From sequence record MK817115.1: 64,000 nucleotides of DNA. One strand, written 5' to 3'. The position numbers and the translations under genes were made by a program. Of this stretch, positions 14,262 to 63,998 are shown piece by piece. The notes beneath the pieces were generated by a model, which saw only the letters and a program-made list of their open reading frames with translations, made no database searches and was not told the DNA's origin. The first letter of the stretch is position 1. Every line of letters begins with the position of its first letter.

Positions 14262-14685
14262 ATGCTACCCTTTCGAAGAATTATCACATCATCAAAACAG
14301 AACATACAACCTTCTGTAACAAAAATAGCTTCATCTGATACAACAGTTTTTGCCCTTATGTCAGATGGTACGTTGTACAGTAGAGAATCTCAAGAGTTTG
14401 GGTTATTCATATTTTTCTAATCATATTATAACTTCATTGGGTGTTTACGCAACTGGTAATAACACAGGCGATAACGCAGGTCAATTGGGTATAGGTACAC
14501 AAACAGATGTGTCGGCCTATACCAAATGTGTACTACCAATAGAGATGAATATGAATAACGTATATGTTACAGCAACTTTATACAGAACTTACTTAACCGA
14601 TGGTATACAAATTTACAGTACTGGACAATATATTACAGACGGTGGAGTTGCCAGTACTGTATTTGTTAAAGATTCACCATTTTAG
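14262..14685 (+). pseudogene. Array member 13, internally deleted and frameshifted
   Basis: MLPFRRIITSS...DGTLYSR (stop 14420) joined out of frame to a C-terminus (GQLGIGT...YRTYLTDG..YSTG...DSPF) that matches members 5 and 6. Confidence 0.7.
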
Positions 14686-15328
14686 GAATATTGTACAAAG
14701 TGTATGCAGTTATTTTAGAACTCTTTTTAAATTCATCATAGAGAAAATTCAAAATTCTGGAGCATTCAATATACTTTTCAATATCTTTATGGATTAATGA
14801 GTACTGAAACATTAAATCAGATGATATAGTGTAGGTACTACCTTTTAAACTGTTTAAAATATCACAGATTTCAGGGTTTACTGGTACTTCGTCAAAATTA
14901 TCATCTAAAACATTTATTTCAAAATCAAAGCTATCTTTGTTTTTGATTAATTTGATAATAGAATCACCATAAACATTATATTGTTTTAATGGATTTACTA
15001 CAATGTTAAAAAGATTGGATGTATTACAATCAATATCCATAAAGTATGTATTATCATTGTACTTAATATTGAAACATCCGTACTCAATAAAATCACCAGG
15101 AGTTATTGATGAGTTTCTTCTCGTTTCAACATAAGAAGCTTTAATTTTGTTTTTATGTAAAAGAGTAATAAATTTCTTAGACTGTTTAGCACCAGCTAAG
15201 TAAGTATTATAACTTGGTCTTTTAAAGATTATAGGACTAGACTTCTCGCCAGAGAAATATTTTTTTATAAATTTACGTTGTTTAACAAAATAGTTTTTAT
15301 AAAACAAACCTAATTTTGATTTCATCAT
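14666..15328 (-). CDS. Hypothetical protein, EExxFQxS-type C-terminal motif variant
   Basis: 220 aa, AGGAG RBS, ISSDLMFQYSLIHKD. Confidence 0.7.
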   Translation of the reverse strand: MMKSKLGLFYKNYFVKQRKFIKKYFSGEKSSPIIFKRPSYNTYLAGAKQSKKFITLLHKNKIKASYVETRRNSSITPGDFIEYGCFNIKYNDNTYFMDIDCNTSNLFNIVVNPLKQYNVYGDSIIKLIKNKDSFDFEINVLDDNFDEVPVNPEICDILNSLKGSTYTISSDLMFQYSLIHKDIEKYIECSRILNFLYDEFKKSSKITAYTLYNIPKMVNL

Positions 15329-15340
15329 AACTCCTTATAC

Positions 15341-15368
15341 ATCCAGTACTATTAAGTACTGGATTTTT
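15341..15368 (+). terminator. Hairpin built from two AGTACT sites, T-run on the + side
   Basis: ATCCAGTACT-ATTA-AGTACTGGAT-TTTT. Confidence 0.6.
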
Positions 15369-15369
15369 A

Positions 15370-15741
15370 TTATGACATACGCTTATTATGAATGGAATTA
15401 TGAATGGATTTTAAATAATTATATAATTTTATCAATCCACTACCAGTAGCTACAAACAGTAGTGCTGTTGGTATCATACATCCAAACATGGTTATTAATT
15501 CATGTATTTCCATACCATCACTATTTGGTCCCACATCAAATATAACAACCAAAACAACACCTAAAATGCTTAGACAATAATATCCCATAAAGACCATAAA
15601 AGTGATATATCCGGCACTTGATTTAATATTACATAACATATTATACACTGGATTAATACAGAAGAAGTATAATAACCATACCAGTGTTCCAGTACTGAAC
15701 ATAATAATTGAAATAATGGAAAATATCTCACGGTAACTCAT
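15370..15741 (-). CDS. Small 3-TM membrane protein, paralogue cluster A
   Basis: 123 aa, three hydrophobic segments, basic C-terminus. Confidence 0.75.
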   Translation of the reverse strand: MSYREIFSIISIIMFSTGTLVWLLYFFCINPVYNMLCNIKSSAGYITFMVFMGYYCLSILGVVLVVIFDVGPNSDGMEIHELITMFGCMIPTALLFVATGSGLIKLYNYLKSIHNSIHNKRMS

Positions 15742-15742
15742 A

Positions 15743-16105
15743 TTATTTCCTCATACCCAAACGTTGGTGGATTTCAGAGATCTTTATATACAATAGTACC
15801 ACAAGGTGCAGTACTAAACAACATATAATTACGGCTAATACCAATGAACATATCATAAGACCGAAGGTTATTGTATTCAAAGAGGATGTGAACAGTCCAA
15901 TTATTAATACAATAAAACCAAAATTGAATACTGTACCCAACACAGTATATGCTGGACTATATCTCTTTTGGATTACATCATATATATTTGATAATGGTCG
16001 CTTATGGAAGTACTTCCCAATGCACACGAATGCATTCAGTGAGAAGATAAATGTATACGCCATTACTAGTAATTGACCAACGAAAGATAATTCTATCCCG
16101 TTCAT
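15743..16105 (-). CDS. Small 3-TM membrane protein, cluster A
   Basis: Start moved to MNGIELSF (GAGG RBS), 120 aa. Confidence 0.7.
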   Translation of the reverse strand: MNGIELSFVGQLLVMAYTFIFSLNAFVCIGKYFHKRPLSNIYDVIQKRYSPAYTVLGTVFNFGFIVLIIGLFTSSLNTITFGLMICSLVLAVIICCLVLHLVVLLYIKISEIHQRLGMRK

Positions 16106-16106
16106 A

Positions 16107-16475
16107 CTAACCTCGTTTACGTTTTTTAATTGTACTGTGCATCTTTTCGAAATAGGGAACCAAAACATATTGAACAGTTTGCCAGATAACCATTAGATTA
16201 TGCACTGCACCACCAAGGATACCAAACACTAGAACAATAATTGCCATAATAGGATCACCGTCTACCATACCCCATTTAAAGATATGTAAAATCCAAGCAA
16301 TGACTAGACAAAATAAACTAAGCCAATACGTAATGAAAAATCCGGCTTGTAATTCATAATCATCAGCAATTTCATCGTATACCGTTTCTAAAAATGATAC
16401 ACAAAAGAATTTACCAATTATAACCACAGTACTAATAAACAGCATAGCAGTTAAGATAATAAGAGCAATTTCCAT
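16107..16475 (-). CDS. Small 3-TM membrane protein, cluster A
   Basis: 122 aa, hydrophobic, coupled stop/start. Confidence 0.75.
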   Translation of the reverse strand: MEIALIILTAMLFISTVVIIGKFFCVSFLETVYDEIADDYELQAGFFITYWLSLFCLVIAWILHIFKWGMVDGDPIMAIIVLVFGILGGAVHNLMVIWQTVQYVLVPYFEKMHSTIKKRKRG

Positions 16476-29960: not shown

Positions 29961-30533
29961 TCATAAATCACGAACAATATTCATTAAACACAATTTAGGT
30001 TTTATAGCATTCAACACCCATATGCATTCTTTGTAAGTAGCTATTATATCATCTAAATGCTCAGTTACAATGCTTTCTTGAAAATATTCTTCATCATTGA
30101 GCTTTGCTAATTTAGTAACATCACACGTAGGCACTATAGGTCTGGATTGTACACCCATTCCATTATTGATATTAGTGAAATGTACAAAATGGTACTTCAC
30201 AACACCTTTATCTAGATTTATTATACATGACAAATTTTCCAACTCAGTTAGTTTTTTATTACAAGTAACATTAATGAAACCAGCATTATAGGCTCTATAA
30301 TCATCTACTGATATCTCAAAATCATTACGTTCAAATATAAGTGAAATGAGTTGGTCCAGTGGTTTGACATTCATATATTTTAATGAATTTACGTATGATA
30401 CTTCAATCTTAGATGAAATTATCTTTTTACTAAGTGCAGTTAATTCTTTGTTAGATTTAACTGTTAAAACAATATGTTTAAACCTAGAACTTTTGTTCTT
30501 TTTTGATACTTTAAAACGACCTTTACGATTCAT
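29961..30533 (-). CDS. EExxFQxS-motif family protein
   Basis: LNDEEYFQESIVTE; start MNRK after GAGG. Confidence 0.7.
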   Translation of the reverse strand: MNRKGRFKVSKKNKSSRFKHIVLTVKSNKELTALSKKIISSKIEVSYVNSLKYMNVKPLDQLISLIFERNDFEISVDDYRAYNAGFINVTCNKKLTELENLSCIINLDKGVVKYHFVHFTNINNGMGVQSRPIVPTCDVTKLAKLNDEEYFQESIVTEHLDDIIATYKECIWVLNAIKPKLCLMNIVRDL

Positions 30534-30540
30534 AATTTCC

Positions 30541-30762
30541 TCAATTAATAATTTCACATTTAACGTGTGGTTTATATAGCATAATTAACCCATTTTTAAG
30601 TACAATGATTGTTGCTCTGTTAGTAATCGAAACGTTTTTAATTATACTTTTTTTATATGTTTCAACATATTTCTCTTCATAATTTATACATTTAATATAT
30701 TCTTTTTGTTTAGCACTTACAACAGTACTGAATAATATCAGTACAAGTACTATATATTTCAT
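30541..30762 (-). CDS. Small exported protein
   Basis: MKYIVLVLILFSTVVSA-K. Confidence 0.65.
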   Translation of the reverse strand: MKYIVLVLILFSTVVSAKQKEYIKCINYEEKYVETYKKSIIKNVSITNRATIIVLKNGLIMLYKPHVKCEIIN

Positions 30763-35349: not shown

Positions 35350-35571
35350 TCATTCCTCATCACTTTCAGTTAGTATAATGCTATGTACAGCTTCCACATA
35401 GCGGTGTGTTTTGGGTGTGTTATACTTTGTAATTTCATCAAACAATTTAAACAGTGCATCTACTTCACTAAGAGCACGAATGAATACATCCATCTTGGTG
35501 ACTACTCTGGAAAACCCGCGTATGTTATTAAATTCAGAGACGTGTTCATACACAACATAGTATCTATTCAT
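35350..35571 (-). CDS. Hypothetical protein
   Basis: 73 aa, layout similar to 35128 and 39617 (Y.V...V.A..E.DA). Confidence 0.65.
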   Translation of the reverse strand: MNRYYVVYEHVSEFNNIRGFSRVVTKMDVFIRALSEVDALFKLFDEITKYNTPKTHRYVEAVHSIILTESDEE

Positions 35572-36086
35572 ATATTAAAAAGTTCCATGAATTCATTGAA
35601 TAAAGAAGTTCTAATGCACATAACAAATTCAAAATCAACATCGATGGTGTCAAGTAGTTTGAACAACTTTGGTACTAATGGATCATTCACCTCAAAGTTA
35701 TGAATCAAACTTTGTTGAAACACATTTTCTTCAGTACTATAATCAATAACAAAATATTCAGCAATACCAGGTGGTGTGTAAACATCATATAAAATATGGC
35801 GGTGATGATTTGTTTTAGAACTAGGGGAATATATAAGTTCTATTTCATAAGATTTATCAGCACTGCGTGCGTAACAAACAATATCAGTACTCGTTATTTC
35901 TGAACCATCACTTCTCTCTGAAAAACAAACATCAGCATAGCGTTTTCCAGAGAGATTCAAAAGGTCATGAGTTGTTTTACCATAACAGAAATCAGTTTCA
36001 ATGCGTATCACATCTTGATATTCAATTGGTCTTGTATCGCGGCGTTCACGATTAAACACTAATTTCAACAACTCATTAATATCCAT
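35568..36086 (-). CDS. EExxFQxS-motif family protein
   Basis: YSTEENVFQQSLIHN. Confidence 0.7.
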   Translation of the reverse strand: MDINELLKLVFNRERRDTRPIEYQDVIRIETDFCYGKTTHDLLNLSGKRYADVCFSERSDGSEITSTDIVCYARSADKSYEIELIYSPSSKTNHHRHILYDVYTPPGIAEYFVIDYSTEENVFQQSLIHNFEVNDPLVPKLFKLLDTIDVDFEFVMCIRTSLFNEFMELFNI

Positions 36087-40703: not shown

Positions 40704-41669
40704 TTAGAAATCTTCGTATTCGTACCCTTTTGCAAGTACTAACTTCTTAAGCTTTTGCATAGCTTCACTGTACTTTCGGTGTATTGATGAACGGGATTTA
40801 ACATATTTTCCATTATCATCAACAAAACCATTATCAGCAATCTCACGAAGCGTTTCAGGTTCATATTCACCTAGACCATGAACACGCTGGATAATCTCAC
40901 GTTCTTTAGTACTCAATTCGTTAGTTAGTTCATTGATAGCATAACGTAAAGGTGCACGGATACTATCAACATTGAGGTTAAAATCAGAAGCAGGTGAATG
41001 AATAATGTCACCTAATGTACCATCTGTAACACCGTCTAATGGTGCATCCAGTGAAGTGTATTCGCTTTGAAATAATAAACAATTATTAACATGCTGAATC
41101 TCAATCCCAGTACCCTCTGAGATTATTTCAGGTGTTGGGCGAACACCATGTTTACGCATATATTCCTGGCAGAATCTTTTTACTTTGATCTTATGAACAC
41201 TCATATAACGTGGGAAGTGTACCATATAGTTAGCGTCAGAACTTTCGTTATAAACTGTCATGTAAATACTAGAAGAAGCATAGGTAATGAACTTCACATT
41301 CTTATTAAGATCAAAGGTTTTTAGTGCTCTCATGAACCCCTCAACACCATATGAAATCTTATCTTCAAATGGGATATAACAAGTACATTTACTTGCTACA
41401 TCAATAATAAGTCCATAATTGTAACGAACTAACAGTTCAGTGTTTTTCTTTACATTGATACCAGCTTGAATATCACGAATTAGATCTTCATTGGAAACAT
41501 TTGGTGGTCGCTTAAGTGTAATATTATATTTGAAACTGCTTTGTACTTTACCTTCATTTTCATCTTTATCTTCAACGAAATCTAAGGCTTCTAGTGTGTT
41601 GACTTCTTCATTAGCAAAACATTCATCCAGAACTTCTTCGGCAATTGTATTTAAATCAAGCTTTTTCAC
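40704..41669 (-). CDS. sigma70-family RNA polymerase sigma factor (RpoD/RpoS-like regions 2-4, divergent)
   Basis: LVRYNYGLII..A; GFMRALKTFD...KFITYA; RPTPEII; SLDAPL; LSTKEREII..HGL..ETLREIA; GTG start with AGGAG. Confidence 0.88.
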   Translation of the reverse strand: MKKLDLNTIAEEVLDECFANEEVNTLEALDFVEDKDENEGKVQSSFKYNITLKRPPNVSNEDLIRDIQAGINVKKNTELLVRYNYGLIIDVASKCTCYIPFEDKISYGVEGFMRALKTFDLNKNVKFITYASSSIYMTVYNESSDANYMVHFPRYMSVHKIKVKRFCQEYMRKHGVRPTPEIISEGTGIEIQHVNNCLLFQSEYTSLDAPLDGVTDGTLGDIIHSPASDFNLNVDSIRAPLRYAINELTNELSTKEREIIQRVHGLGEYEPETLREIADNGFVDDNGKYVKSRSSIHRKYSEAMQKLKKLVLAKGYEYEDF

Positions 41670-49753: not shown

Positions 49754-50200
49754 TTAGTTATATGCTGTGAATAGGTCAATGTTTTTATCATCTACACTGA
49801 TTAATTTGCCAGTTGAACTAACAAACACAATATTTCCACCGGGCGTTAGTTGAACACGCTGGTTAACTGAATATTGCCCATTAAGGTTGTAATCAGCCCA
49901 TTCGACTACATAACGTTGAATAACACCGTTAGTATCATAAAGATAAACGTGTGTCACGTCACGCATTTTCAAACGTTCCAACAATGTAGAGTTATCCATG
50001 AAATCAGATGGTGTATTGCTGCGTAAAGCAATACCAAACTCACCGATAACAGTACTAATTGTCAGTCCGTTTGAAAAACGGCTACAAAGAGTCTTCTCAT
50101 CAGCAATATGCATCCATAAAACATTCTTTACATCAATATCAACAAATTCACAGTTTTCAAAAACCAAACCTACTTTGGAAACTTTACCATTAAATTGCAT
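49754..50200 (-). CDS. Hypothetical protein
   Basis: 148 aa, AGGAG RBS. Confidence 0.7.
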   Translation of the reverse strand: MQFNGKVSKVGLVFENCEFVDIDVKNVLWMHIADEKTLCSRFSNGLTISTVIGEFGIALRSNTPSDFMDNSTLLERLKMRDVTHVYLYDTNGVIQRYVVEWADYNLNGQYSVNQRVQLTPGGNIVFVSSTGKLISVDDKNIDLFTAYN

Positions 50201-50600
50201 TAGTAACTCCTATTTTTTTATATTTTAAAATTAAATCACTCACGGCTTTCATTAGATTATATGGAATAGCTAACTCTTTAACAGTACTATCCATAAAATG
50301 TTCTTCTTCGGTATCATAAAATGTTGAACTATAGTGTTCACAATCATTTATACTATCATAAAAAGAAGACGTAAGTTTATCGACAATGACAGTGATTTGT
50401 TTACCAGTTTTGGTATATCCTACCTGAACGGTTAATCCAATATCATCAGCCTCTACACGAATTATAAACGAATTATTAGTATAGTTCAGCCAACAATCTT
50501 CACCAAAGTATACAACACTGTGTTTCTTCTGAAATGAAGTTGCGGTGTTAAGAACGCCAATAGCAACATCAACTGTTTTTTCATTTAAAATATTAGACAT
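50190..50600 (-). CDS. EExxFQxS-motif family protein
   Basis: YDTEEEHFMDSTVKE; start MSNILNE. Confidence 0.7.
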   Translation of the reverse strand: MSNILNEKTVDVAIGVLNTATSFQKKHSVVYFGEDCWLNYTNNSFIIRVEADDIGLTVQVGYTKTGKQITVIVDKLTSSFYDSINDCEHYSSTFYDTEEEHFMDSTVKELAIPYNLMKAVSDLILKYKKIGVTNAI

Positions 50601-51009
50601 TTGTGTTCCTGCTTCGTATGTTTCGTGAAATCTCAAAAATACCATTCAACTGTTCAACAGTTAAACCCTGTAAATCATAAACAGTTGATAGTTGAAAGAA
50701 AAGTTCTGAATCTATACTATCATGTTCAATTGGAAGATTCAAGAGGTCTTTGTTAATAAAATAATCATATGTTCGAATTGTCAAAGAATCACCAAAGATA
50801 TCAATGTAAAATTTCGGAACATTATGTAACGAAACATCTATTAATATGTTTTCAGCATATCTACAAGAAATTTTAGAATTATTTTTATAAGATTGGTATG
50901 AAAAATTATAAGGTTCATCGACCAATGTGTATGATGAGGTATCACCTTCGGAAAATATTACACCACATTCAATAAGATGTGTTAACGACTTAGGTGGAAT
51001 TTTTAACAT
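50593..51009 (-). CDS. EExxFQxS-motif family protein
   Basis: IDSELFFQLSTVYDLQGLT. Confidence 0.72.
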   Translation of the reverse strand: MLKIPPKSLTHLIECGVIFSEGDTSSYTLVDEPYNFSYQSYKNNSKISCRYAENILIDVSLHNVPKFYIDIFGDSLTIRTYDYFINKDLLNLPIEHDSIDSELFFQLSTVYDLQGLTVEQLNGIFEISRNIRSRNTNV

Positions 51010-51010
51010 T

Positions 51011-51439
51011 TCACTTCCTATCCTTACTCATATTACTACGGATCACCCCACTAAGAAAACATATTTTCCTTAATGTATCATAACTGATATTTGTAAGATC
51101 ATGTACAAAATTCAACTGCAAGTACATTTCTTCAGTTAATTGATTAAATGTATCATCAACACAAATGTTAGTATGTTCCGTTATATCTATTTCTATATTA
51201 TTTTCCCAAATATCAATGCTAACAGCATAGTCTGATGTATGTCTGGATTGAACTGAAATAAAAATATTATTACTGTTGTATAATGTCTCGGTGTATCCAT
51301 TCAAAAATGATCCAACGACAACATCAAAAATGCCATCTCTAATTGGATTTTTTGTTTCAAACGTATCACTACAAACTTGACGGTATACAATGTCAACATA
51401 CTTATCAATTAAAGTAAACAAATAACTCATTGCATTCAC
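51011..51439 (-). CDS. EExxFQxS-motif family protein
   Basis: LTEEMYLQLNFVHDLTNIS. Confidence 0.72.
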   Translation of the reverse strand: MNAMSYLFTLIDKYVDIVYRQVCSDTFETKNPIRDGIFDVVVGSFLNGYTETLYNSNNIFISVQSRHTSDYAVSIDIWENNIEIDITEHTNICVDDTFNQLTEEMYLQLNFVHDLTNISYDTLRKICFLSGVIRSNMSKDRK

Positions 51440-52149: not shown

Positions 52150-52515
52150 CTAATTGTGGGTTTTAACCAAACGTGAGACAGCTAGTATAGCATTAACCTC
52201 ATCCAATGTCAACCCACCAATGTCATTAATCATTGAGTACTGAAATAGTGATTCTTCAGTGTAATGGTAATCATGAGAAGCAATAAAGATTGCTGGTTTA
52301 GAGGCATCCAAAATTATCTTTGTCATTGTACTATATATATCAAATTGATATAATAGATTTTCACCTGTATATGCTACGTAGATATTATTTGAATAGGCTG
52401 GATGTACCATTGTAAAACCATCATAACATAATATTTTTATGTTCGGATCGTCAAAATTGCCTGTATAAAGGTTATTACAAACATCTTGCATTATACGTAC
52501 TATTAGACTAGTCAT
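52150..52515 (-). CDS. EExxFQxS-motif family protein
   Basis: YTEESLFQYSMINDIGGLT. Confidence 0.72.
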   Translation of the reverse strand: MTSLIVRIMQDVCNNLYTGNFDDPNIKILCYDGFTMVHPAYSNNIYVAYTGENLLYQFDIYSTMTKIILDASKPAIFIASHDYHYTEESLFQYSMINDIGGLTLDEVNAILAVSRLVKTHN

Positions 52516-52933
52516 TTAATGGATTTAGTACCTCTTCTGGAATCAACTTTTGAACTTTAAGTATAGCTTTAATGTCCTCAAATGTTAATCCTAATATGTC
52601 GTTAAGGAGGCAGTACTGGAAGAATTTTTCTTCAGTATCAATATCGTTAACATTCAATTCAATTGATTCATCATCATAATCATAATCTTCATTATCACAT
52701 TCATAACTTCTGAATATAACTTTTTCAAAATACACATCAAATGAATAAAAATGATTATTGAATTCATAACCAAGAAAAATATTAAAACATTTACTCAAAT
52801 CTGTGGTTTGATTCAAATCTGGATCATAGCAAAATACTCTAACTTCACCAATATCTTCTAATTGTACATCATGCAGTGACCATGCGTTGTTTTTTAATAC
52901 ATAGTTCACCATTTTAACAATGTTGTATGTCAT
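52508..52933 (-). CDS. EExxFQxS-motif family protein
   Basis: IDTEEKFFQYCLLNDILGLT. Confidence 0.72.
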   Translation of the reverse strand: MTYNIVKMVNYVLKNNAWSLHDVQLEDIGEVRVFCYDPDLNQTTDLSKCFNIFLGYEFNNHFYSFDVYFEKVIFRSYECDNEDYDYDDESIELNVNDIDTEEKFFQYCLLNDILGLTFEDIKAILKVQKLIPEEVLNPLND

Positions 52934-52939: not shown

Positions 52940-53029
<90 letters not shown>

Positions 53030-53032
53030 AGA

Positions 53033-53142
<110 letters not shown>

Positions 53143-53194
53143 GCCAAGAGTCGGCATAGGTGCAGCACTACAAAGTTCTTCAAGCTGCTTGGTA

Positions 53195-53226
<32 letters not shown>

Positions 53227-53227
53227 T

Positions 53228-53284
<57 letters not shown>

Positions 53285-53286
53285 TA

Positions 53287-53837
<551 letters not shown>

Positions 53838-53846
53838 TAATACCCG

Positions 53847-54248
53847 CTAGTAGTTTAAGTCTGCGGCGTTGAATACACCAAGTGAAGTCTTACCACGTAG
53901 TTTAGGTGAAAGGACATACTTTGTCAATTTCTTTTTACCGTACCAGCGATTGAATTCGTCTTCAGTGACATATGGGTTCTGGAAATCGTATTCGCGTTTC
54001 TTATGCAGTTCTTTAGCACGTTCTGCAATCTTGGTTCGTTGGTCTTCTGGAATGTCGAATGTATTGTTACGTTCACACCATTCGTGCTCTAATGCACCCT
54101 GAAGAAACTGTTCGGTTTCTTTGACTAGAGTGATTTTAGTCAAGCCTTTTTCGATGTTCATATAATCATCGACGTATCCATTCCAAATAACAATCTCTGG
54201 ATTGCCGTCAATTTCTTGAAGCATTTTGATCAAGTCATTCTTTTTCAT
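53847..54248 (-). CDS. Hypothetical protein
   Basis: MKKNDLIKMLQEIDGNPEI. Confidence 0.72.
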   Translation of the reverse strand: MKKNDLIKMLQEIDGNPEIVIWNGYVDDYMNIEKGLTKITLVKETEQFLQGALEHEWCERNNTFDIPEDQRTKIAERAKELHKKREYDFQNPYVTEDEFNRWYGKKKLTKYVLSPKLRGKTSLGVFNAADLNY

Positions 54249-54256
54249 TTAAATTC

Positions 54257-54514
<258 letters not shown>

Positions 54515-54535
54515 TTATACCTCTCATTGTTTATG

Positions 54536-54607
<72 letters not shown>

Positions 54608-54611
54608 TAAT

Positions 54612-55219
<608 letters not shown>

Positions 55220-55270
55220 ATAAACCTCACTATACGTAACTTACACCATATACGTCTGATTGTGGAATTC

Positions 55271-55295
55271 ATTATATCAGTACTGAACTATTTAG

Positions 55296-55299
<4 letters not shown>
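55271..55299 (-). promoter_or_regulatory. Repeated promoter, copy 2
   Basis: TTGACT-AAATAGTTCAGTACTGA-TATAAT. Confidence 0.85.
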
Positions 55300-55709
<410 letters not shown>

Positions 55710-55718
55710 CTTTTTTTT

Positions 55719-55880
<162 letters not shown>

Positions 55881-55884
<4 letters not shown>

Positions 55885-56045
55885 AATCGTACCAGTAGTT
55901 CAATTAAGTACATTTCATATGCTGGATCGTTGATAAGTTTATCATACAGATGTGGCTCTGAAATGAATTCCCAATGATACTTTAGCCATCTACCGATACC
56001 CGAATATCTAAAATTAATGTCATTCATCCATTCTTCATGTGTCAT
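55881..56045 (-). CDS. MTHEEW microprotein (54 aa, not in ORF track)
   Basis: MTHEEWMNDINFRYSGIGRWLKYHW...ELLVRL*. Confidence 0.7.
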
Positions 56046-56206
56046 AATCGTACCATTATTTCAATAAAGAACCACGGATACACTTCATGATTCATAAGTT
56101 TATCGTATTCTGCTGGGTCTGATATGATTTCCCAATGATACTTTAGCCAACTACCGATACCCGAATATCTAAAATTAATGTCATTCATCCATTCTTCATG
56201 CGTCAT
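56042..56206 (-). CDS. MTHEEW microprotein (54 aa, not in ORF track)
   Basis: MTHEEWMNDINFRYSGIGSWLKYHW...EIMVRL*, AAGG RBS. Confidence 0.7.
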   Translation of the reverse strand: MTHEEWMNDINFRYSGIGSWLKYHWEIISDPAEYDKLMNHEVYPWFFIEIMVRL

Positions 56207-56229
56207 GGTTTTTAACCTTTAATTAAAAT

Positions 56230-56306
56230 TGGCCGAGGTAGAGGGACTTGAACCCCCAACCTAGAGATTAGAATTCTCTTGCACTATCCAATTGTGCTAT
56301 ACCCCG
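56230..56306 (-). tRNA. tRNA-Arg(UCU)
   Basis: CGGGGTA/TACCTCG-GCCA, A20, loop AT-TCT-AA. Confidence 0.9.
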
Positions 56307-56310
56307 TATT

Positions 56311-56426
<116 letters not shown>

Positions 56427-56459
56427 ATGTTATGTCCCATTATATAATGAATTAATGAT

Positions 56460-56678
56460 TTATGCAAGTGCTTTAGATACACCGACACCAATAATTCCAG
56501 TGATATCGATATGGATATTGGCAAGTTGATTACTATCATATGGGTTTGTTTCTGTAATAACCAATGTTGTATCATTGACTAAAACCACAGTACCTTTTAC
56601 ACGATAACCATGTAGTAGTACTTGAACCTCATCTTCAGGTTTTAATGATTGAATAACTTCAAATAAAGTTGTTTCCAT
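56460..56678 (-). CDS. Small beta-rich protein, possibly Sm/SH3-like
   Basis: Start METTLF; EVQVLL..V.GTVV.V.DTTLVI..HIDI..I.GV. Confidence 0.55.
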   Translation of the reverse strand: METTLFEVIQSLKPEDEVQVLLHGYRVKGTVVLVNDTTLVITETNPYDSNQLANIHIDITGIIGVGVSKALA

Positions 56679-56694
56679 TTTTTGTATTCCTTGT

Positions 56695-56877
56695 TTAGTT
56701 TTGATTATTTGACTTTCTAAATGCCAGTTCGCATATAAACCAGGGTTTTCTGGTATCCAAAACATATGACCTGAAAAGATTTTCATCTCTTAATATATCA
56801 TAATGTACCTGACGAATGCCATTCCCAAAGCAGTCATGTTCTTTATGCTGTTTGGACATCCATTCTTCGTGTGTCAT
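56695..56877 (-). CDS. MTHEEW microprotein
   Basis: MTHEEWMSKQHKEHDCFGNG...WFICELAFR. Confidence 0.7.
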   Translation of the reverse strand: MTHEEWMSKQHKEHDCFGNGIRQVHYDILRDENLFRSYVLDTRKPWFICELAFRKSNNQN

Positions 56878-56878
56878 T

Positions 56879-57214
<336 letters not shown>

Positions 57215-57654: not shown

Positions 57655-57836
57655 CTCTTAATATCCATAACGGCTATACTAAAATATGTACCAAAATCAT
57701 CACAATTGATAATGTTGTTATAGTACTCAATTGGGTTACGCAATGATATATACAATTCAAGCTTAAAATAGTATATATCTGCTGCATTTATATTATAGTG
57801 TAGATTAAACCACTCATCAAATGTCTTAGGCTGCAT
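57651..57836 (-). CDS. Hypothetical microprotein
   Basis: MQPKTFDEWF, a distant THEEW-like start. Confidence 0.6.
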   Translation of the reverse strand: MQPKTFDEWFNLHYNINAADIYYFKLELYISLRNPIEYYNNIINCDDFGTYFSIAVMDIKR

Positions 57837-58230
57837 TATATTTATCTTTATAAAAATCCATGATTTTAGTCAACAGTACTGCAATCGTATAATCTAAATC
57901 AGGATAAAGTAAATTGTACTGAAATTCTTCCTCAACACTATAGTTAGTGGTACAGTACTGGTAATCTTTATAACCTATTGAAAAATAATTCGGATACAAT
58001 GTACAACGAAAGCGATAAGCTTCATCTGTCATATAATCATTGTATTCAACACAGAAGTATAGTGATTTTGAATTTAATTCGATAAGCTCCACGAAACCAT
58101 CTGGTAATGAATGATTATAAATGGTATTATCATTATTAAACCATTCATAATATTTTTCTAAAAAATCACTAATAGATACATCAAGACTTTGTATAGGTGG
58201 AGTTATGATAATTTGAACTTCGTTATTCAT
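57826..58230 (-). CDS. EExxFQxS-motif family protein
   Basis: YSVEEEFQYNLLYPD. Confidence 0.7.
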   Translation of the reverse strand: MNNEVQIIITPPIQSLDVSISDFLEKYYEWFNNDNTIYNHSLPDGFVELIELNSKSLYFCVEYNDYMTDEAYRFRCTLYPNYFSIGYKDYQYCTTNYSVEEEFQYNLLYPDLDYTIAVLLTKIMDFYKDKYNAA

Positions 58231-58715
58231 TTTCTCCCCTTATTATATTTTACATATGGGTTATCATAAAGATCATAACTTTTCTGAGCACGTTCTTTTT
58301 TGCGTTCATACATAATTCTATCATACTCCTTCGCTTTCCCATTTGCTTCATTATACAGTTTTAAAATTAGCAAAAATGTATCAAGGTCAGGGTAGTTTGC
58401 TGGATTGATAGTACTTAACATAAATCGTTCTTCTTCAGTTCTAGCAACATCAAACTCATACTTAATAGTTTTATACCCACTCCATTTATATGTGTGTATT
58501 ACTTTGTTAGTAAGTACATTATATTCAACGAAATCAGTACTACCATCAAGTACACGAGTAATCTTAATAGATGTACCAATGACAATCTGTACAGAACTCA
58601 TTTCTGAAGTTTTAAAGTAATAAATGTTATTACGGCGAAGATTAACTTCTCGATCTCCAATGCGAACATGCTTAATAACTTCCATTAATGGTTCTGGTAC
58701 ACCACGAATTGGCAT
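58227..58715 (-). CDS. EExxFQxS-motif family protein
   Basis: RTEEERFMLSTINP; start MPIRG after AAGGAG. Confidence 0.7.
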   Translation of the reverse strand: MPIRGVPEPLMEVIKHVRIGDREVNLRRNNIYYFKTSEMSSVQIVIGTSIKITRVLDGSTDFVEYNVLTNKVIHTYKWSGYKTIKYEFDVARTEEERFMLSTINPANYPDLDTFLLILKLYNEANGKAKEYDRIMYERKKERAQKSYDLYDNPYVKYNKGRK

Positions 58716-58716
58716 G

Positions 58717-58935
58717 TTAATGCTCCTTTTTAATTCTATACATTTTAACAGCACTGGTTTCCCAAAAGTCACCATCTAAGTTGCTGAATTTATATATAGT
58801 TTCGAGATTTTCACCATCAAACGAAAACAACACAACATCTTCTTGTACAGTGCCGTTATGTAACATGATATCATAAACTTCATTTCTTACAAATAATTCT
58901 TTGGCCTTAGAAATATCAAAATCAATAAATTTCAT
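58717..58935 (-). CDS. Hypothetical protein
   Basis: Start MKFIDF after GGAGG. Confidence 0.7.
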   Translation of the reverse strand: MKFIDFDISKAKELFVRNEVYDIMLHNGTVQEDVVLFSFDGENLETIYKFSNLDGDFWETSAVKMYRIKKEH

Positions 58936-58983: not shown

Positions 58984-59376
58984 CTACCAGCATGTTTTCA
59001 TAACTTCTGTGATGTGATTCATTTTATCTTTAAGTACGTAAGGGATGCAAATTTCACCTGGGCTTAACGTTGTGTTCTTTTGAAACTCATCTTCTTCGGA
59101 ATCAGCCAGGTAAAATGGGTGTGTCACAAAGGTATCATCAACTGGACGATTATGTGGTTTCATTAATGCATCATGATTGACAAAATAATAAGCATCAATA
59201 TCAGGACGGAAATACAAACAATCAACCTTAATGCACGGGTGTAACCATAAGGACAAAGAATATGTTATTTGGTTACCAATTTGTCTTGGGCCTGATGCAA
59301 TTGTATTGATGTTATTTTTATCTTGTACCATTTCATAAATGAAATCTATCATTTCGTGTAGTTCTGATTCAGTCAT
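58984..59376 (-). CDS. EExxFQxS-motif family protein
   Basis: ADSEEDEFQKNTTLS. Confidence 0.7.
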   Translation of the reverse strand: MTESELHEMIDFIYEMVQDKNNINTIASGPRQIGNQITYSLSLWLHPCIKVDCLYFRPDIDAYYFVNHDALMKPHNRPVDDTFVTHPFYLADSEEDEFQKNTTLSPGEICIPYVLKDKMNHITEVMKTCW

Positions 59377-61348: not shown

Positions 61349-61638
61349 TAGATTGTTCCTTTCATGAAGTCTGGAATAACGATTACGATAGGAGGATTAT
61401 ACTCTACATAACCATTTTTTGTCAATAGACTTTTAATATCTGAAATCACATTATCATGCTGTTCAATATCTTTATCACAAAAGATTTCCAATTCTTTCTG
61501 AAACGGTTTTTTAACCGAGATGTTTTGAGTCAGTGTTTGGATTCTCTGTAACATATCAATTGGATCTGGACTGAACTCATTACCAACATAAAGAGTACCA
61601 GATGCATCTTTTTCTAGCAAGACTTCTAAAATTTTCAT
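61348..61638 (-). CDS. Hypothetical protein
   Basis: 96 aa. Confidence 0.65.
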   Translation of the reverse strand: MKILEVLLEKDASGTLYVGNEFSPDPIDMLQRIQTLTQNISVKKPFQKELEIFCDKDIEQHDNVISDIKSLLTKNGYVEYNPPIVIVIPDFMKGTI

Positions 61639-62471
61639 TTCGTATCCTTCAATTTACTAAAGTTTTCTCGTGTAAATCCAGGAACTGGAAAATATACATC
61701 ACAGTCAACATCAGGATTCATAATTACCATGTCATTACATATTATATCACGAATTTTACTGCCGTCCACGATTTTTTGCATTAAATCATTCCATTTTTTA
61801 CGAGAAATAACGAATGTACTAATTATACATAAATCATGTCCACGTTTTGAAATATATCCTAGTACTTCATTATCGTAAACAACACGTATGGTAACTTTTC
61901 CAATTGTAACCCCTCTTACTGGATTAATACTAGTATCTTCAAAAATTAGTTCTAATTTAAGTTTACCATTCGAAATAAGTGATGAAGTATATTTAGAAAC
62001 CATTTTATCAATTTCTTGAGTCAAATCATCTCTACCTAGATATTCAAATACAGAATAAGTTAATTCGTCTGCACCTAACTGTTGGATAGTTGGAAGCTGT
62101 GCAACCATATCTAAAGATACAGGTTCGATATATATTCTTTCAATATCAGAAGATTGTACAAATAGACAACCATCAGGTGTCGTATCTCTAACAATTTCGG
62201 CATAATATGTATAAAGATAAAAAACATTAGACTCGGATGAGTCAGTTTCTACCCAAATCTCAGATTGTTTCATTTCATCTTTATGAAGAATTCGTTGAGT
62301 AAATCCTATGTAAAAACCAAGATATAAATCATCATCAGTTTCAAACGGATTAAACATCAAATACGGATATTTGTCAAGGTACTCATTGAACTTACGCTGT
62401 ACATCTCTATCACAATCCATGATATACTTTCGGAATTCAGAAATGATTATTTTTTCTAATGACATAATCAA
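61635..62471 (-). CDS. Hypothetical protein
   Basis: 278 aa, GAGG RBS. Confidence 0.7.
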   Translation of the reverse strand: MIMSLEKIIISEFRKYIMDCDRDVQRKFNEYLDKYPYLMFNPFETDDDLYLGFYIGFTQRILHKDEMKQSEIWVETDSSESNVFYLYTYYAEIVRDTTPDGCLFVQSSDIERIYIEPVSLDMVAQLPTIQQLGADELTYSVFEYLGRDDLTQEIDKMVSKYTSSLISNGKLKLELIFEDTSINPVRGVTIGKVTIRVVYDNEVLGYISKRGHDLCIISTFVISRKKWNDLMQKIVDGSKIRDIICNDMVIMNPDVDCDVYFPVPGFTRENFSKLKDTK

Positions 62472-62665
62472 TCCTCAAGATGCATGTAGTACATAAACAT
62501 CGCCAACCATATAAAAAACCCGAAACAACGAAGTAAAATATCAATTGTTGGATCTGTCCCACCATTAACTTGGTAAACGATTACTGGGATTAAAGCAATA
62601 GTAATAGACACAGCACATAAGATGAATGCAACAAACACCTCAAACATAAACTTAATCGTTTCCAT
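62468..62665 (-). CDS. 2-TM membrane protein
   Basis: 65 aa, hydrophobic hairpin. Confidence 0.65.
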   Translation of the reverse strand: METIKFMFEVFVAFILCAVSITIALIPVIVYQVNGGTDPTIDILLRCFGFFIWLAMFMYYMHLED

Positions 62666-63224
62666 TATTATCCTTCAATGTGTAGTGTAGTACATCTAAA
62701 AAGTTATACATTGATTCATTACGCACAACCTTGATTGTTAAATTACGACAACCCAACATACGTTTGAGGCGACGCTTCACCGCAGTTAAATCATGTGTAC
62801 TATTCGTATACAGACCATTAACCTGACCTGGAACAGTTGGCACATGAAGAATGTAATCATAATTCATTAGTAAGCGTTGATTATATTTCTTTAATGCTTG
62901 CTTGTATTCTGAAATATTTTCAAAGAATGTACAATAACGGTCGTAACGATTCATTTTATTCAAAATTGAAATACGAAAAGCGTTACCACTATTCCAATCA
63001 TCTTCAGTTGGGTTTGGGTTGATATGTGCCATGTTAGCTGTACTGTACCCACCACTTGTGAAAACTTCAGAATATCCATTCTCAAAAACATACAATGTTG
63101 CTTTGTGGCCTCTGAATTCTTTACGGTACTTTGACAGTACTTGGATGTGATTACGCTTGGACTTGTACATTTCGTAACCTTCATAATCTGAACTGAATTC
63201 ACAAATTTTATCAACACCAGCCAT
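62652..63224 (-). CDS. Hypothetical protein
   Basis: 190 aa, GAGG RBS; TTGACA-17nt-TATAAT at about 63257-63285. Confidence 0.72.
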   Translation of the reverse strand: MAGVDKICEFSSDYEGYEMYKSKRNHIQVLSKYRKEFRGHKATLYVFENGYSEVFTSGGYSTANMAHINPNPTEDDWNSGNAFRISILNKMNRYDRYCTFFENISEYKQALKKYNQRLLMNYDYILHVPTVPGQVNGLYTNSTHDLTAVKRRLKRMLGCRNLTIKVVRNESMYNFLDVLHYTLKDNNGND

Positions 63225-63281
63225 TTCGTATATCCTCGTTTAATTAATATAGGAGTATTATACATACTCCATTTTCATGTG

Positions 63282-63425
63282 TCAAGCTTTATAATACGGA
63301 AGACTTTTTACTAAAGATTCAGACGTATTATTTTTTACCCATGTACTACCGTTGTCATTAGATACGTATCCAGTACCATTAATAAATTTACGCATAATAC
63401 CAGTAAAAATATTAGTATACACCAT
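63282..63425 (-). CDS. 47-aa hypothetical protein (not in ORF track)
   Basis: MVYTNIFTGIMRKFINGTGYVSNDNGSTW..., TAATG coupling. Confidence 0.5.
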   Translation of the reverse strand: MVYTNIFTGIMRKFINGTGYVSNDNGSTWVKNNTSESLVKSLPYYKA

Positions 63426-63595
63426 TACTCAGTATCCTTTGGTTTAGAATGTAAACCATACTTTTCATCATAACGATCATAGGTAGTACCATTAGTACTA
63501 GCTTTGATGCTTTCAGTACGATTGATTGGTTCAATCTTAACACCACGATAACCAATCTCTTCTTTAAATTGTTCCCATGATTCACGTAAACTCAT
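63425..63595 (-). CDS. Hypothetical protein
   Basis: Start MSLRESW. Confidence 0.6.
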   Translation of the reverse strand: MSLRESWEQFKEEIGYRGVKIEPINRTESIKASTNGTTYDRYDEKYGLHSKPKDTE

Positions 63596-63609
63596 TTTAG
63601 CCCCTTTTG

Positions 63610-63753
63610 TTATTTCATACACTCACGTAGGTCAATCTTTTCAACTGAACCACCGAGTACTAGATAGTGAAAATTAGAATCTTTGTTTGCCATATTCAAA
63701 AGATCTGCTTTCTGTTGAAGCGTAAAGCGTGAAGTACTGTTACGTACTGGCAT
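63610..63753 (-). CDS. 47-aa hypothetical protein (not in ORF track)
   Basis: MPVRNSTSRFTLQQKADLL..., AAGGAG RBS. Confidence 0.6.
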   Translation of the reverse strand: MPVRNSTSRFTLQQKADLLNMANKDSNFHYLVLGGSVEKIDLRECMK

Positions 63754-63755
63754 AG

Positions 63756-63998
63756 TTACTCCTTAAAGTAGATATCACGAATTTGTTTAATCATCTCTAA
63801 CTCTTGAAGTCCTATCATACCAAAGTCTTCTTGTATTGTCAACTGCTGAAAGTACATTTCTTCTAAATTATTGTACGGAATCTCAACAAGATTCAAAGGC
63901 TCACTTTCCACACGATAAATTGTATCTTGTACATCATGCTTTTCGATATGAATACTAAATGTATCTTTTTGAATTCTAAATTTATAAAATGTTTGATT
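63756..63998 (-). CDS. EExxFQxS-motif family protein, 3' part (runs off the window)
   Basis: ...YNNLEEMYFQQLTIQEDFGMIGLQEL...YFKE*. Confidence 0.7.
   Translation of the reverse strand, partial: NQTFYKFRIQKDTFSIHIEKHDVQDTIYRVESEPLNLVEIPYNNLEEMYFQQLTIQEDFGMIGLQELEMIKQIRDIYFKE

What the first reader, a model, noticed from the sequence alone, without database searches (positions are those of the whole stretch)
14666..63998. Dispersed 14-member family: variable N-terminal domain plus a constant C-terminal EExxFQxS helix motif
Seen: otherwise dissimilar 115-220 aa ORFs share a motif 20-50 aa from the C-terminus, followed by an amphipathic helix. Members: ISSDLMFQYS (14666), NDEEYFQES (29961), STEENVFQQS (35568), DTEEEHFMDS (50190), DSELFFQLS (50593), TEEMYLQLN (51011), TEESLFQYS (52150), DTEEKFFQYC (52508), DEEDEFQKR (54836), KTEEEYFQMS (55296), SVEEEFQYN (57826), RTEEERFMLS (58227), DSEEDEFQKN (58984), LEEMYFQQL (63756). 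Inference: an adaptor architecture analogous to C-terminal F-box-like motifs in poxvirus proteins, where variable domains bind different targets and the constant motif docks on one partner such as a protease, RNA polymerase or packaging machinery. I do not recognise it as a named family.
Basis: partly seen in the sequence, partly recalled or inferred. Interest (0 to 1): 0.72.

Follow-up and report, generated by a model that had tools for sequence, protein, structure and literature searches.

The report
Giant small-protein family in jumbo coliphage
The 14 motif-sharing genes are real and belong to an undescribed family of at least 67 very diverged copies of one small, mostly acidic protein that fills about 9% of the jumbo coliphage phAPEC6 genome. 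The shared motif is most likely a built-in helix of one fold with no known structural relative, not a tag added to unrelated domains, and the function is unknown.

Summary
The window is bases 1-64000 of Escherichia phage vB_EcoM_phAPEC6 (Asteriusvirus, 352.6 kb).

**Observation.** All 14 ORFs exist on the minus strand. Each carries [TS]-E-E-x-x-F-Q-x-S 35-70 residues from the C-terminus. The motif is far beyond chance: exact EE..FQ.S occurs in 26 genome ORFs against 0.05 expected from shuffles. Ten of the 14 members are firm. Four (14666, 54836, 57826, 58984) rest mainly on the motif.

**Extent.** The family is much larger than reported, with at least 67 members in this genome, all on one strand, including a tandem array of about 38 at 289-318 kb. 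The profile gives 56-58 matches in 121Q and fEgEco12, 35 in RaK2 and 6 each in GAP32 and CBB. It matches 141 clusters (50% identity) among 1.84 billion proteins, all of them small.

**Fold.** AlphaFold models of two subfamilies give one compact alpha/beta domain with the motif as a short internal helix. The better model (pLDDT 89.5, pTM 0.86) has no structural neighbour in PDB, AFDB or the ESM Atlas outside the family.

**Other evidence.**
- Synonymous codons vary freely at the motif.
- Orthologues are under purifying selection.
- No window member or main-array gene number is in the published virion proteome.
- The surrounding regions are rich in near-consensus sigma-70 promoters.

**Reading.** The best reading is an early, non-structural repertoire of host-interaction proteins. 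The function is inferred, not shown. The adaptor reading is not supported but not excluded. This scan has already found the same family in related phages.

The parts
14666..15328 (-). Family member, weakly supported. 220 aa, basic (pI 9.2), with an N-terminal extension. Motif SSDLMFQYS.
   Evidence: ORF and motif. Leave-one-out 8.4 bits. Not recovered in the strict test. hhalign probability 69%, E 4e-5, motif in register. Orthologues 84-98% identical in related phages.
29961..30557 (-). Family member. Annotated gp039c with its start at 30533. About 190 aa, basic. Motif NDEEYFQES.
   Evidence: Strict test E 3.8e-5, rank 1. BLAST-detectable paralogue at 317662. Orthologues down to 44-47% identity keep the motif.
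35568..36086 (-). Family member gp054c, 172 aa. Motif STEENVFQQS.
   Evidence: Strict test E 1.2e-6, rank 1.
50190..50645 (-). Family member gp083c (annotated start 50600). Motif DTEEEHFMDS.
   Evidence: Strict test E 2.5e-5, rank 1. dN/dS 0.41 against fEgEco12.
50593..51009 (-). Family member, 138 aa. Not annotated in MK817115. Motif DSELFFQLS. No orthologue in the syntenic stretch of fEgEco12.
   Evidence: gap between gp083c and gp084c. Strict test E 8.8e-6. Matches phrog_17453. Absent from the orthologue list.
51011..51439 (-). Family member gp084c. Motif TEEMYLQLN. A near-consensus sigma-70-like promoter lies at 51508-51479.
   Evidence: Strict test E 8.9e-5. The fEgEco12 orthologue is only 44% identical; dN/dS 0.32.
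52150..52515 (-). Family member gp087c, 121 aa. Motif TEESLFQYS, which forms helix 87-96 of the model. This was the protein modelled first.
   Evidence: AlphaFold pLDDT 72, pTM 0.65. Strict test E 2.8e-7. Found in 37 phage records at 70-100% identity.
52508..52933 (-). Family member gp088c, 141 aa, very acidic (net charge -19). Overlaps gp087c by 8 nt. Motif DTEEKFFQYC.
   Evidence: Strict test E 1.9e-6.
54836..55219 (-). Family member gp092c, moderately supported. Motif DEEDEFQKR. A sigma-70-like promoter lies at 55299-55271.
   Evidence: Leave-one-out 18.2 bits. Strict test E 0.027. hhalign E 0.0034. Orthologues 63-91% identical keep the motif. Promoter.
55296..55649 (-). Family member gp093c, 117 aa. 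Motif KTEEEYFQMS. A sigma-70-like promoter (11 of 12 positions) lies at 55708-55681, 32 nt upstream of the start codon.
   Evidence: Strict test E 9.4e-7.
57826..58230 (-). Family member gp102c, weakly supported. Motif SVEEEFQYN.
   Evidence: Leave-one-out 12.6 bits, rank 1. Not recovered in the strict full-length test. hhalign E 0.0045, motif in register. dN/dS 0.08.
58227..58775 (-). Family member gp103c (annotated start 58715). Basic, with a C-terminal tail. Motif RTEEERFMLS.
   Evidence: Strict test E 3.6e-6. It is the only window member whose N-terminal part alone matches the family (13.7 bits).
58984..59376 (-). Family member gp105c, weakly supported. Motif DSEEDEFQKN.
   Evidence: Leave-one-out 10.1 bits. 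Strict test E 0.17. hhalign E 0.016. dN/dS 0.20.
63756..63998 (-). C-terminal 80 residues of a family member. The ORF continues to 64199 beyond the window (147 aa in all). Not annotated in MK817115. Motif LEEMYFQQL.
   Evidence: Strict test E 7e-4. hhalign probability 95%.

Best explanation
The 14 ORFs are the dispersed members of one old, hyper-diverged paralogous family with at least 67 genes in phAPEC6. The proteins are small (103-223 aa), mostly acidic, cytoplasmic and single-domain.

All members share one alpha/beta fold: an N-terminal helix, a beta meander, a short motif helix and a long helix, with an extra strand and helix in the longer members. The motif [TS]-E-E-x-x-F-Q-x-S-[TL]-[VI]-x-D is the short internal helix plus the turn into the next helix. 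It is the best-kept piece of the fold. The Phe is most likely the hydrophobic anchor. The Thr/Ser, Glu, Ser and Asp residues sit where helix caps sit. These residue roles are inferred from the secondary structure, not measured.

The genes lie in one-strand blocks that carry many near-consensus sigma-70 promoters. No window member, and no gene numbered between gp347 and gp549, is in the published virion proteome. So the proteins are most likely made early by the host RNA polymerase.

The most likely function, which is inferred, is a repertoire of binders. Each copy would use its own variable surface against a different host protein, for host takeover, counter-defence or host range. This would resemble the multigene families near the genome ends of large eukaryotic DNA viruses.
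For: **Family is real and large.**

**Every database hit maps back to the family.** All 138 new database proteins have a family member as their best BLAST hit in the phAPEC6 ORF set.

**One fold.**
- The two AlphaFold models have the same order of elements. The second has pLDDT 89.5 and pTM 0.86.
- BFVD models of 16-29% identical proteins from related phages superpose at TM 0.58-0.74 over the full length.

**Selection acts on the protein.**
- Synonymous codons vary at the motif: Phe TTT 38 / TTC 25, Gln CAG 31 / CAA 30, Ser AGY 33 / TCN 18.
- dN/dS is 0.08-0.48 for nine orthologue pairs against fEgEco12.
- Individual copies are conserved in 37 phage records and across three genera.

**Non-structural.** No window member, and no gene numbered between gp347 and gp549 (which should include the main array), is among the 62 virion proteins of phAPEC6 (PMC7247149 Table 1).

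**Early promoters.**
- There are 100 promoter matches of at least 11 of 12 positions on the minus strand and 14 on the plus strand. Shuffled genomes give about 25 in total.
- The matches concentrate at 20-80 and 310-340 kb.
- Such promoters sit directly upstream of gp093c, gp092c and gp084c.

**Acidity.** Median pI is 4.78 and median net charge -9. Other small minus-strand ORFs have 5.45 and -4.

**Position near a genome end.** In fEgEco12 the big array starts at about 27 kb, just inside the experimentally confirmed 20,993-bp terminal repeat (PMC13070987).
Against: - No experiment or annotation gives a function.
- Early expression is inferred from promoter consensus only. The phage also encodes its own RpoD-like sigma factor (gp066c), which might use such promoters. 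The public RNA runs were uninformative.
- The shared fold was modelled for two members only. Both models used family-wide alignments, which favour one fold.
- Four window members are tied to the family mainly by the motif.
- The near-invariance of polar residues (E, E, Q, S) in proteins with about 10% mean column identity could equally mark a functional site.
- The homodimer prediction gave no answer.
Confidence: 0.6

Rival explanations
1. Adaptor or hub-docking model, a modified form of the first reader's idea. The invariant E-E / F-Q / S patch is an exposed functional site through which all members bind one common partner. That partner could be a protease, RNA polymerase, the phage sigma factor or another machine. 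The variable rest of the domain would select different targets.
For: - Polar residues are kept in 48-61 of 65 copies although the rest of the protein is about 10% identical.
- The motif is kept in orthologues down to below 30% identity in other genera.
- The arrangement is formally similar to F-box or PRANC proteins.
Against: - There is no separate module. The motif is an internal helix of one compact domain.
- The residues fit helix-capping positions.
- There is no F-box, PRANC or other adaptor signature in Pfam.
- No partner is known.
- A small family size would be enough for such a system.
Confidence: 0.17
2. Ligand-binding or catalytic family. The conserved Glu-Glu, Gln and Ser form a small-molecule or metal site. 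The proteins could act as sponges for host immune signalling nucleotides, or as small enzymes, with paralogues tuned to different ligands.
For: - A conserved polar cluster sits in an otherwise free-drifting sequence.
- The proteins are small, acidic and likely early, like known phage sponge proteins (general knowledge, not tested here).
Against: - No structural or sequence similarity to any enzyme or known sponge.
- 67 copies is far more than the known signal molecules would require.
- The conserved residues lie on one short helix, not in a pocket formed by several segments, as far as the alignment shows.
- No ligand test was run.
Confidence: 0.08
3. Functionless expansion. The copies are the debris of tandem duplication that filled spare capsid capacity, as suggested for jumbo phage genomes in general. 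The motif would be merely the slowest-decaying remnant.
For: - Hua et al. 2017 (PMC5646251) interpreted the 121Q array as tandem duplication that expanded the genome.
- There is some copy turnover: 50593 lacks an orthologue in fEgEco12.
- dN/dS in the family is about twice that of its neighbours.
Against: - All copies keep open frames of the right length.
- dN/dS is below 0.5 in all nine pairs.
- Individual copies are conserved in 37 records and across genera.
- The Ser codon family has switched while the residue is kept.
Confidence: 0.05
4. Processing or targeting signal. The motif is a protease cleavage site (it resembles the potyviral E-x-x-Y-x-Q/S site) or a capsid-targeting tag.
For: - Superficial likeness of EEEYFQxS to ENLYFQS.
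- The phage encodes a prohead protease.
Against: - Ser is at +2 after Gln, not +1, and the residue after Gln is variable.
- The motif lies in a confidently predicted helix inside a folded domain.
- No window member or main-array gene number is in the virion proteome.
- The T4-type prohead protease cuts after Glu in a different context (general knowledge).
Confidence: 0.02

Closest known systems
[quoted passage not shown] 2017, mBio, PMC5646251)
   Same: It is the same family. IMG/VR contig 2706795820 has the length of 121Q (348,532 bp). A 20-kb stretch of it holds 31 members, and the whole contig gives 56 matches.
   Different: - The paper gives one sentence, calls the genes very similar and draws only a genome-expansion conclusion.
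- Here the copies prove hyper-diverged: only 68 of 2211 pairs are BLAST-detectable and the highest identity is 67%.
- About 29 more dispersed members are added, the 14 in this window among them.
- The motif, the fold and the distribution are defined.
PHROGs families of unknown function (for example phrog_17453, 34359, 33518, 28118, 24027, 35192, 38341, 34619)
   Same: They contain these very proteins. Weak cross-hits between them fall on the C-terminal motif region.
   Different: PHROGs splits the family into many unrelated-looking groups. None is annotated and none recognises the superfamily.
Multigene families near the genome ends of large eukaryotic DNA viruses (ASFV MGF110/360/505, poxvirus Bcl-2-like and ankyrin/PRANC families)
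   Same: - Dozens of diverged paralogues in tandem arrays close to the terminal repeats.
- They are non-structural and each copy is conserved on its own.
- Sequence similarity is reduced to a fold or a short motif.
   Different: - No sequence or fold relationship.
- The host is a bacterium.
- A role in host range or immune evasion is only an analogy here.
- There is no separate docking module such as PRANC or F-box.
Lineage-specific expansion of about 35 zinc-ribbon proteins in Bacillus phage G (Iyer et al. 2021, PMC7824862)
   Same: A jumbo phage that devotes tens of genes to one small-protein family of unknown role.
   Different: - A different fold: that one is a zinc ribbon, while this family has no Cys/His pattern.
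- A different phage group.
- This family is larger and spans several genera.
p32 / gC1qR / Mam33 family of acidic proteins
   Same: The first, lower-confidence model shares its order of elements (N-terminal helix, antiparallel sheet, C-terminal helices) and its acidity. Six p32-family entries appear among the top 50 matches, at Z 3.2-4.4.
   Different: - The Z scores are below the noise level of the method.
- The high-confidence model shows no p32 match at all; its best Z overall is 2.7.
- No Pfam MAM33 hit.

The resemblance is rejected.

Membership tests
EExxFQxS family of RaK2-like jumbo phages (undescribed; defined here) | The motif [TS]-E-E-x-x-F-Q-x-S-[TL]-[VI] lies 27-79 residues from the C-terminus of a 100-225-aa protein. 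| tested here: met
   Met by all 14 window ORFs. The motif is degenerate in 14666 (SSDLMFQYS) and 51011 (LQ in place of FQ).
EExxFQxS family of RaK2-like jumbo phages (undescribed; defined here) | A significant profile match when the member and everything BLAST-similar to it are left out of the profile. | tested here: inconclusive
   Met by 10 of 14 (E 7e-4 or better). Marginal for 54836 and 58984. Not met by 14666 and 57826. hhalign still places all four in register and above the negative controls.
EExxFQxS family of RaK2-like jumbo phages (undescribed; defined here) | One shared fold: N-terminal helix, beta meander, motif helix, long helix. | tested here: inconclusive
   Shown for gp087c (pLDDT 72) and for a long-type array member (pLDDT 89.5). 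Supported by BFVD models of proteins from related phages.
   No Pfam hit of any kind in 52 members. The models show a single compact domain.
   No candidate partner is known. The one complex job, a homodimer, gave no answer.
p32 / Mam33 (PF02330) | Fold match to solved p32-family structures well above background, and a profile match. | tested here: not met
   Z 3.2-4.4 for the weaker model only. No match for the confident model. No Pfam hit.
Polymorphic-toxin immunity proteins (TriTu PF24689, SUKH) | A fold or profile match to an immunity family. | tested here: not met
   TriTu appears at TM 0.44/0.54 and Z 3.2 for the weaker model only. Nothing appears for the confident model. No Pfam hit.
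Virion, internal-head or protease-processed proteins | Presence in purified virions, with the cleavage site in an accessible segment. | tested here: not met
   No window member, and no gene numbered between gp347 and gp549, is among the 62 virion proteins. The members at 220-237 kb were not mapped to gp numbers. The motif lies in a confident helix.
Lineage-specific multigene family of a large virus (a kind, not a homologous family) | Many diverged paralogues in tandem arrays, each conserved on its own among related viruses. | tested here: met
   67 copies, with about 38 in the 289-318 kb array. Orthologues are under purifying selection. The family is present in Asteriusvirus, Alcyoneusvirus and Mimasvirus.

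The most novel reading that the evidence does not exclude
The family is a phage-encoded repertoire of specific binders built on a previously unseen fold. The invariant Glu-Glu / Phe-Gln / Ser helix would be a working site shared by all copies, for docking to one host or phage machine or for assembling paralogues into mixed oligomers. The hypervariable sheet surface would pick different host targets. This would be a bacterial-virus counterpart of F-box or MGF-type host-range and immune-evasion families, and a large untapped source of inhibitors of E. coli, Klebsiella and Salmonella defence or housekeeping proteins.
Probability: 0.2. Interest if true: 0.85.

Novelty: new variant of a known kind. 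Interest (0 to 1): 0.58.

Why it matters
About one gene in eight of a well-studied group of therapeutic-candidate coliphages belongs to a single family that no database names. The group includes phAPEC6, 121Q, PBECO4 and RaK2 relatives.

The family's confident predicted fold has no neighbour among solved or predicted structures. Each copy is kept by selection across genera, so the phage needs them.

If they are host-interaction proteins, they are a ready-made library of dozens of distinct inhibitors or modulators of enterobacterial proteins. They might also help explain how these jumbo phages cope with diverse hosts.

Defining the family also corrects annotation. Two members in this window are missing from the GenBank record. 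It also gives a profile that unifies dozens of PHROGs.

Tried and rejected
**Database and fold searches that found nothing**
- Pfam, PHROGs and PDB-sequence searches: nothing informative.
- Foldseek against PDB and AFDB, VIA-align wide search and ESM Atlas, for both models: no match outside the family. For the better model the best Z is 2.7. The only AFDB hit is an unnamed 147-aa protein, 28% identical, most likely itself a family member.
- ESM-Atlas feature search: scores 0.46-0.61, uninformative.

**Resemblances considered and dropped**
- p32/Mam33 and TriTu immunity proteins were seen with the weaker model. They vanished with the confident one.

**Tests with weak or no result**
- An HMM of the N-terminal regions alone, built from non-window members: only weak enrichment, and no individually significant hit except 58227.
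- Homodimer prediction of the array member: no answer, score 0.00.
- Public RNA runs: only unstranded contigs of relatives in metagenomes, which cannot show transcription.

**Readings rejected**
- DNA-level repeat: rejected on codon variation.
- Protease site or capsid tag: rejected.

I used 121Q loci from IMG/VR and database proteins instead.

**Literature**
- Nothing beyond one sentence in Hua et al. 2017.

Full report
**What the window is.** The 64-kb window is identical to bases 1-64000 of Escherichia phage vB_EcoM_phAPEC6 (MK817115.1). This is a 352,598-bp jumbo phage of the genus Asteriusvirus. From about 14.6 kb onward almost all genes are small, unannotated and on the minus strand.

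**Check of the observation.**
- Aligned on the motif, they give the consensus T-E-E-x-x-F-Q-x-S followed by a hydrophobic pair and Asp. The motif sits 35-55 residues from the C-terminus, and 70 residues in 58227.
- In a leave-one-out test with an HMM of the 50-residue C-terminal region, 12 of 14 scored 10-32 bits. Every non-member ORF of the window scored at most 7.7 bits, and 5040 shuffled ORFs at most 9.0 bits. ORFs 14666 and 29961 were borderline.
- The exact string EE..FQ.S occurs in 26 of 1259 ORFs of the whole phage, all on the minus strand. Shuffles give 0.05.

**Strict membership test.** I left out each member together with everything BLAST-similar to it and scored it with a profile of about 240 family sequences.
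- Nine members were recovered at rank 1 (E 1e-4 or better), and 63756 at rank 2 (E 7e-4).
- ORFs 54836 and 58984 were marginal.
- ORFs 14666 and 57826 were not recovered.
- hhalign of their orthologue alignments against the family still puts the motif of all four in register. E-values are 4e-5 to 0.016, against a best of 0.058 in 25 negative controls.
- I therefore call ten window members firm and four probable.

**The family is much larger than reported.**
- A profile of the 14 C-terminal regions, run over the whole phage record, found 58 places, all on the minus strand.
- Iterating on the ORF set converged on 67 members, with no hit at E below 1e-3 in a fivefold shuffled ORF set.
- Members lie at 14.7, 30.0 and 35.6 kb, at 50-59 kb (ten), at 63.8-71.3 kb (ten), at 220-238 kb (three), at 289-318 kb (about 38, nearly contiguous) and at 346.6 kb.
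- Two more array ORFs (310541-310882 and 311599-312222) are probable members.
- Together the 67 genes make 31.1 kb, or 8.8% of the genome. Lengths are 103-223 aa, with a median of 150.
- The copies are very diverged. Only 68 of 2211 pairs are BLAST-detectable at E below 1e-3, the highest identity is 67%, and mean column identity of the alignment is about 10%.
- Two window members, 50593-51009 and 63756-64199, have no CDS in the GenBank record.

**Distribution outside this phage.**
- A profile of 13 window members, 31 members from a 20-kb stretch of phage 121Q (taken from IMG/VR) and 8 orthologues was searched against 1.84 billion representative proteins. It matched 141 clusters at E 1e-3 or better, all 65-210 aa.
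Many are under 40% identical to any phAPEC6 copy yet carry a near-perfect motif.
- Named sources are 345-380-kb enterobacterial jumbo phages and bacterial assemblies that contain such phages. tblastn adds Salmonella phages Munch, 7t3 and PHA46, Klebsiella phages fENko-Kae01, RaK2 and K64-1, Pectobacterium CBB, Cronobacter GAP32 and Erwinia Hallingskeid.
- The same profile gives 56 matches in 121Q, 58 in fEgEco12, 35 in RaK2 and 6 each in GAP32 and CBB. These are lower bounds for the distant genera.
- gp087c alone has orthologues in 37 phage records at 70-100% identity.

**Fold.**
- AlphaFold2 on gp087c (121 aa, 52-row alignment) gave pLDDT 72 and pTM 0.65. The model has helix 2-13, five strands, helix 87-96 (the motif TEESLFQYSM) and helix 104-114.
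- A long-type array member (162 aa, 90% identical to 305666-306154, 87-row alignment) gave pLDDT 89.5 and pTM 0.86. The model has helix 3-21, six strands, a short helix 99-103, helix 109-115 (the motif), helix 121-135, a strand and a last helix. pLDDT is 97-98 around the motif.
- The order of elements is the same in both models. The motif is an internal short helix of one compact domain.
- BFVD models made by others for 16-29% identical proteins of related phages superpose on the gp087c model at TM 0.58-0.74 over essentially its full length.
- The pattern Thr/Ser, Glu-Glu-(Glu), then Phe-Gln, then Ser, then Asp four residues later fits an N-cap and capping box, a hydrophobic anchor, a C-cap and the N-cap of the next helix. 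This is inference from the secondary structure, because coordinates are not returned.
- At the sequence level the N-terminal parts are barely alignable. An HMM of N-terminal regions from non-window members recovers only 58227 on its own, although 7 of 14 window members fall in the top 31 of 1206.
The evidence points to one diverged fold, not to unrelated domains carrying a tag.

**No known relative.**
- Pfam, PDB sequences and PHROGs annotation give nothing.
- For the confident model, Foldseek against PDB has no hit below E 3.
- The VIA-align wide search has a best Z of 2.7, with only 11 of 48,161 chains at Z 2 or more.
- AFDB clusters give a single hit, an unnamed 147-aa protein at 28% identity that is most likely itself a family member.
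- The ESM Atlas stays at TM 0.30 or below.
- The weaker model had suggested p32/Mam33 (Z up to 4.4) and the TriTu immunity protein. Both disappear with the better model, so I reject them.

**Selection.**
- At the conserved residues synonymous codons vary freely: Phe TTT 38 / TTC 25, Gln CAG 31 / CAA 30. Ser uses both codon families, AGY 33 and TCN 18.
- The motif is therefore kept at the protein level and is not a DNA repeat or a trace of recent duplication.
- Against fEgEco12, nine window members have dN/dS of 0.08-0.48 (median 0.30). Neighbouring non-family genes have about 0.13. ORF 50593 has no orthologue in the syntenic stretch.
- This means purifying selection on each copy, somewhat faster evolution than the neighbours, and some turnover.

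**Expression and location.**
- No window member, and no gene numbered between gp347 and gp549 (which should include the main array), is among the 62 virion proteins found by mass spectrometry (PMC7247149 Table 1). The three members at 220-238 kb were not mapped to gp numbers.
- Genome-wide there are 100 sigma-70 matches of at least 11 of 12 positions on the minus strand and 14 on the plus strand. Shuffled genomes give about 25 in total. The matches concentrate at 20-80 and 310-340 kb.
- In the window such promoters sit directly upstream of gp093c, gp092c and gp084c.
- In fEgEco12 the termini were mapped experimentally and the direct terminal repeat is 20,993 bp (PMC13070987). There the big array runs from about 27 to 55 kb, just inside the left repeat.
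- The proteins are mostly acidic, with median pI 4.78 and net charge down to -26.
- Public RNA runs hold only unstranded contigs of relatives and do not show transcription.
- Early expression is thus inferred, not shown. The phage's own RpoD-like sigma factor (gp066c, 40704-41669) is a caveat.

**Interpretation.**
- Shown: one large, old, selected family; a single predicted domain; no window or main-array member in the virion proteome; restriction to the RaK2-like jumbo phages.
- Inferred: early expression, and a role as a repertoire of host-directed binders (takeover, counter-defence or host range). The inference is by analogy with terminal multigene families of large DNA viruses and with the general nature of small acidic early phage proteins.
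A shared functional patch on the motif helix cannot be excluded, and I give it about 0.17.
- Enzyme or sponge, junk duplication, and cleavage or targeting signal are less likely, for the reasons given under the rival explanations.

**Relation to what is known.**
- Hua et al. [quoted passage not shown] That array is this family.
- The phAPEC6 paper alludes to an array of related genes.
- No paper, Pfam entry or PHROG defines the family, its motif, its dispersed members or its fold.
- This scan's earlier notes report the same family in EJP2, K64-1 and other Klebsiella, Salmonella and E. coli jumbo phages, and reach the same reading. My results were obtained independently on this window and agree with them.

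**Verdict.** The kind of thing, a lineage-specific multigene family of a large virus, is known. This family and its fold are undescribed.

Noticed in passing
window 52950-57192, minus strand: Seven tRNA genes (Thr, Asn, Met, Ser-ACT, Arg, Ser-TGA, Gly) are interleaved with family members. The MK817115 feature table shows only CDS there, while related phage records annotate tRNAs. ARAGORN calls one tRNA-Ser with the unusual anticodon ACT. AGT is the commonest Ser codon at the motif (26 of 51).
   Followed up: partly
window 50593-51009 and 63756-63998 (ORF continues to 64199): Two family members have no CDS in the GenBank record of phAPEC6.
   Followed up: yes
whole phage; in the window mainly 20-64 kb, minus strand: Near-consensus sigma-70 promoters show strong strand asymmetry: 100 on the minus strand, 14 on the plus strand, and about 25 expected in total. 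Four perfect TTGACA-N16-18-TATAAT sites lie at 53343, 60878, 61425 and 63285.
   Followed up: partly
window 40704-41669, minus strand: gp066c is annotated as an RpoD-like sigma-70 factor. A phage sigma factor inside the presumed early region could itself read the sigma-70-like promoters.
   Followed up: no
window 55720-56206, minus strand: Three consecutive, overlapping 165-nt genes (gp094c-gp096c, 54 aa each) look like a small tandem triplication. They are 94-96% conserved in fEgEco12.
   Followed up: no
window 1-14000, plus strand: Several genes of about 40 kDa (gp003-gp010) are annotated as DNA condensation proteins. They appear with gp549 and gp551 in the virion proteome. They seem to be another paralogous set, on the opposite strand.
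   Followed up: no
phAPEC6 310541-310882 and 311599-312222 (outside the window): Two more array ORFs score just under my cut-off but outrank all other background in the leave-out tests. One carries DVDAFMFQLSLVHD. They are probably members 68 and 69.
   Followed up: partly
L050 (IMG/VR contig of 354,378 bp, the size of Yersinia phage fHe-Yen9-04): One ORF (1185-1616) matches the family HMM at E 7e-5, and BFVD lists fHe-Yen9-03/04 proteins as weak structural matches. The family may reach Eneladusvirus.
   Followed up: no
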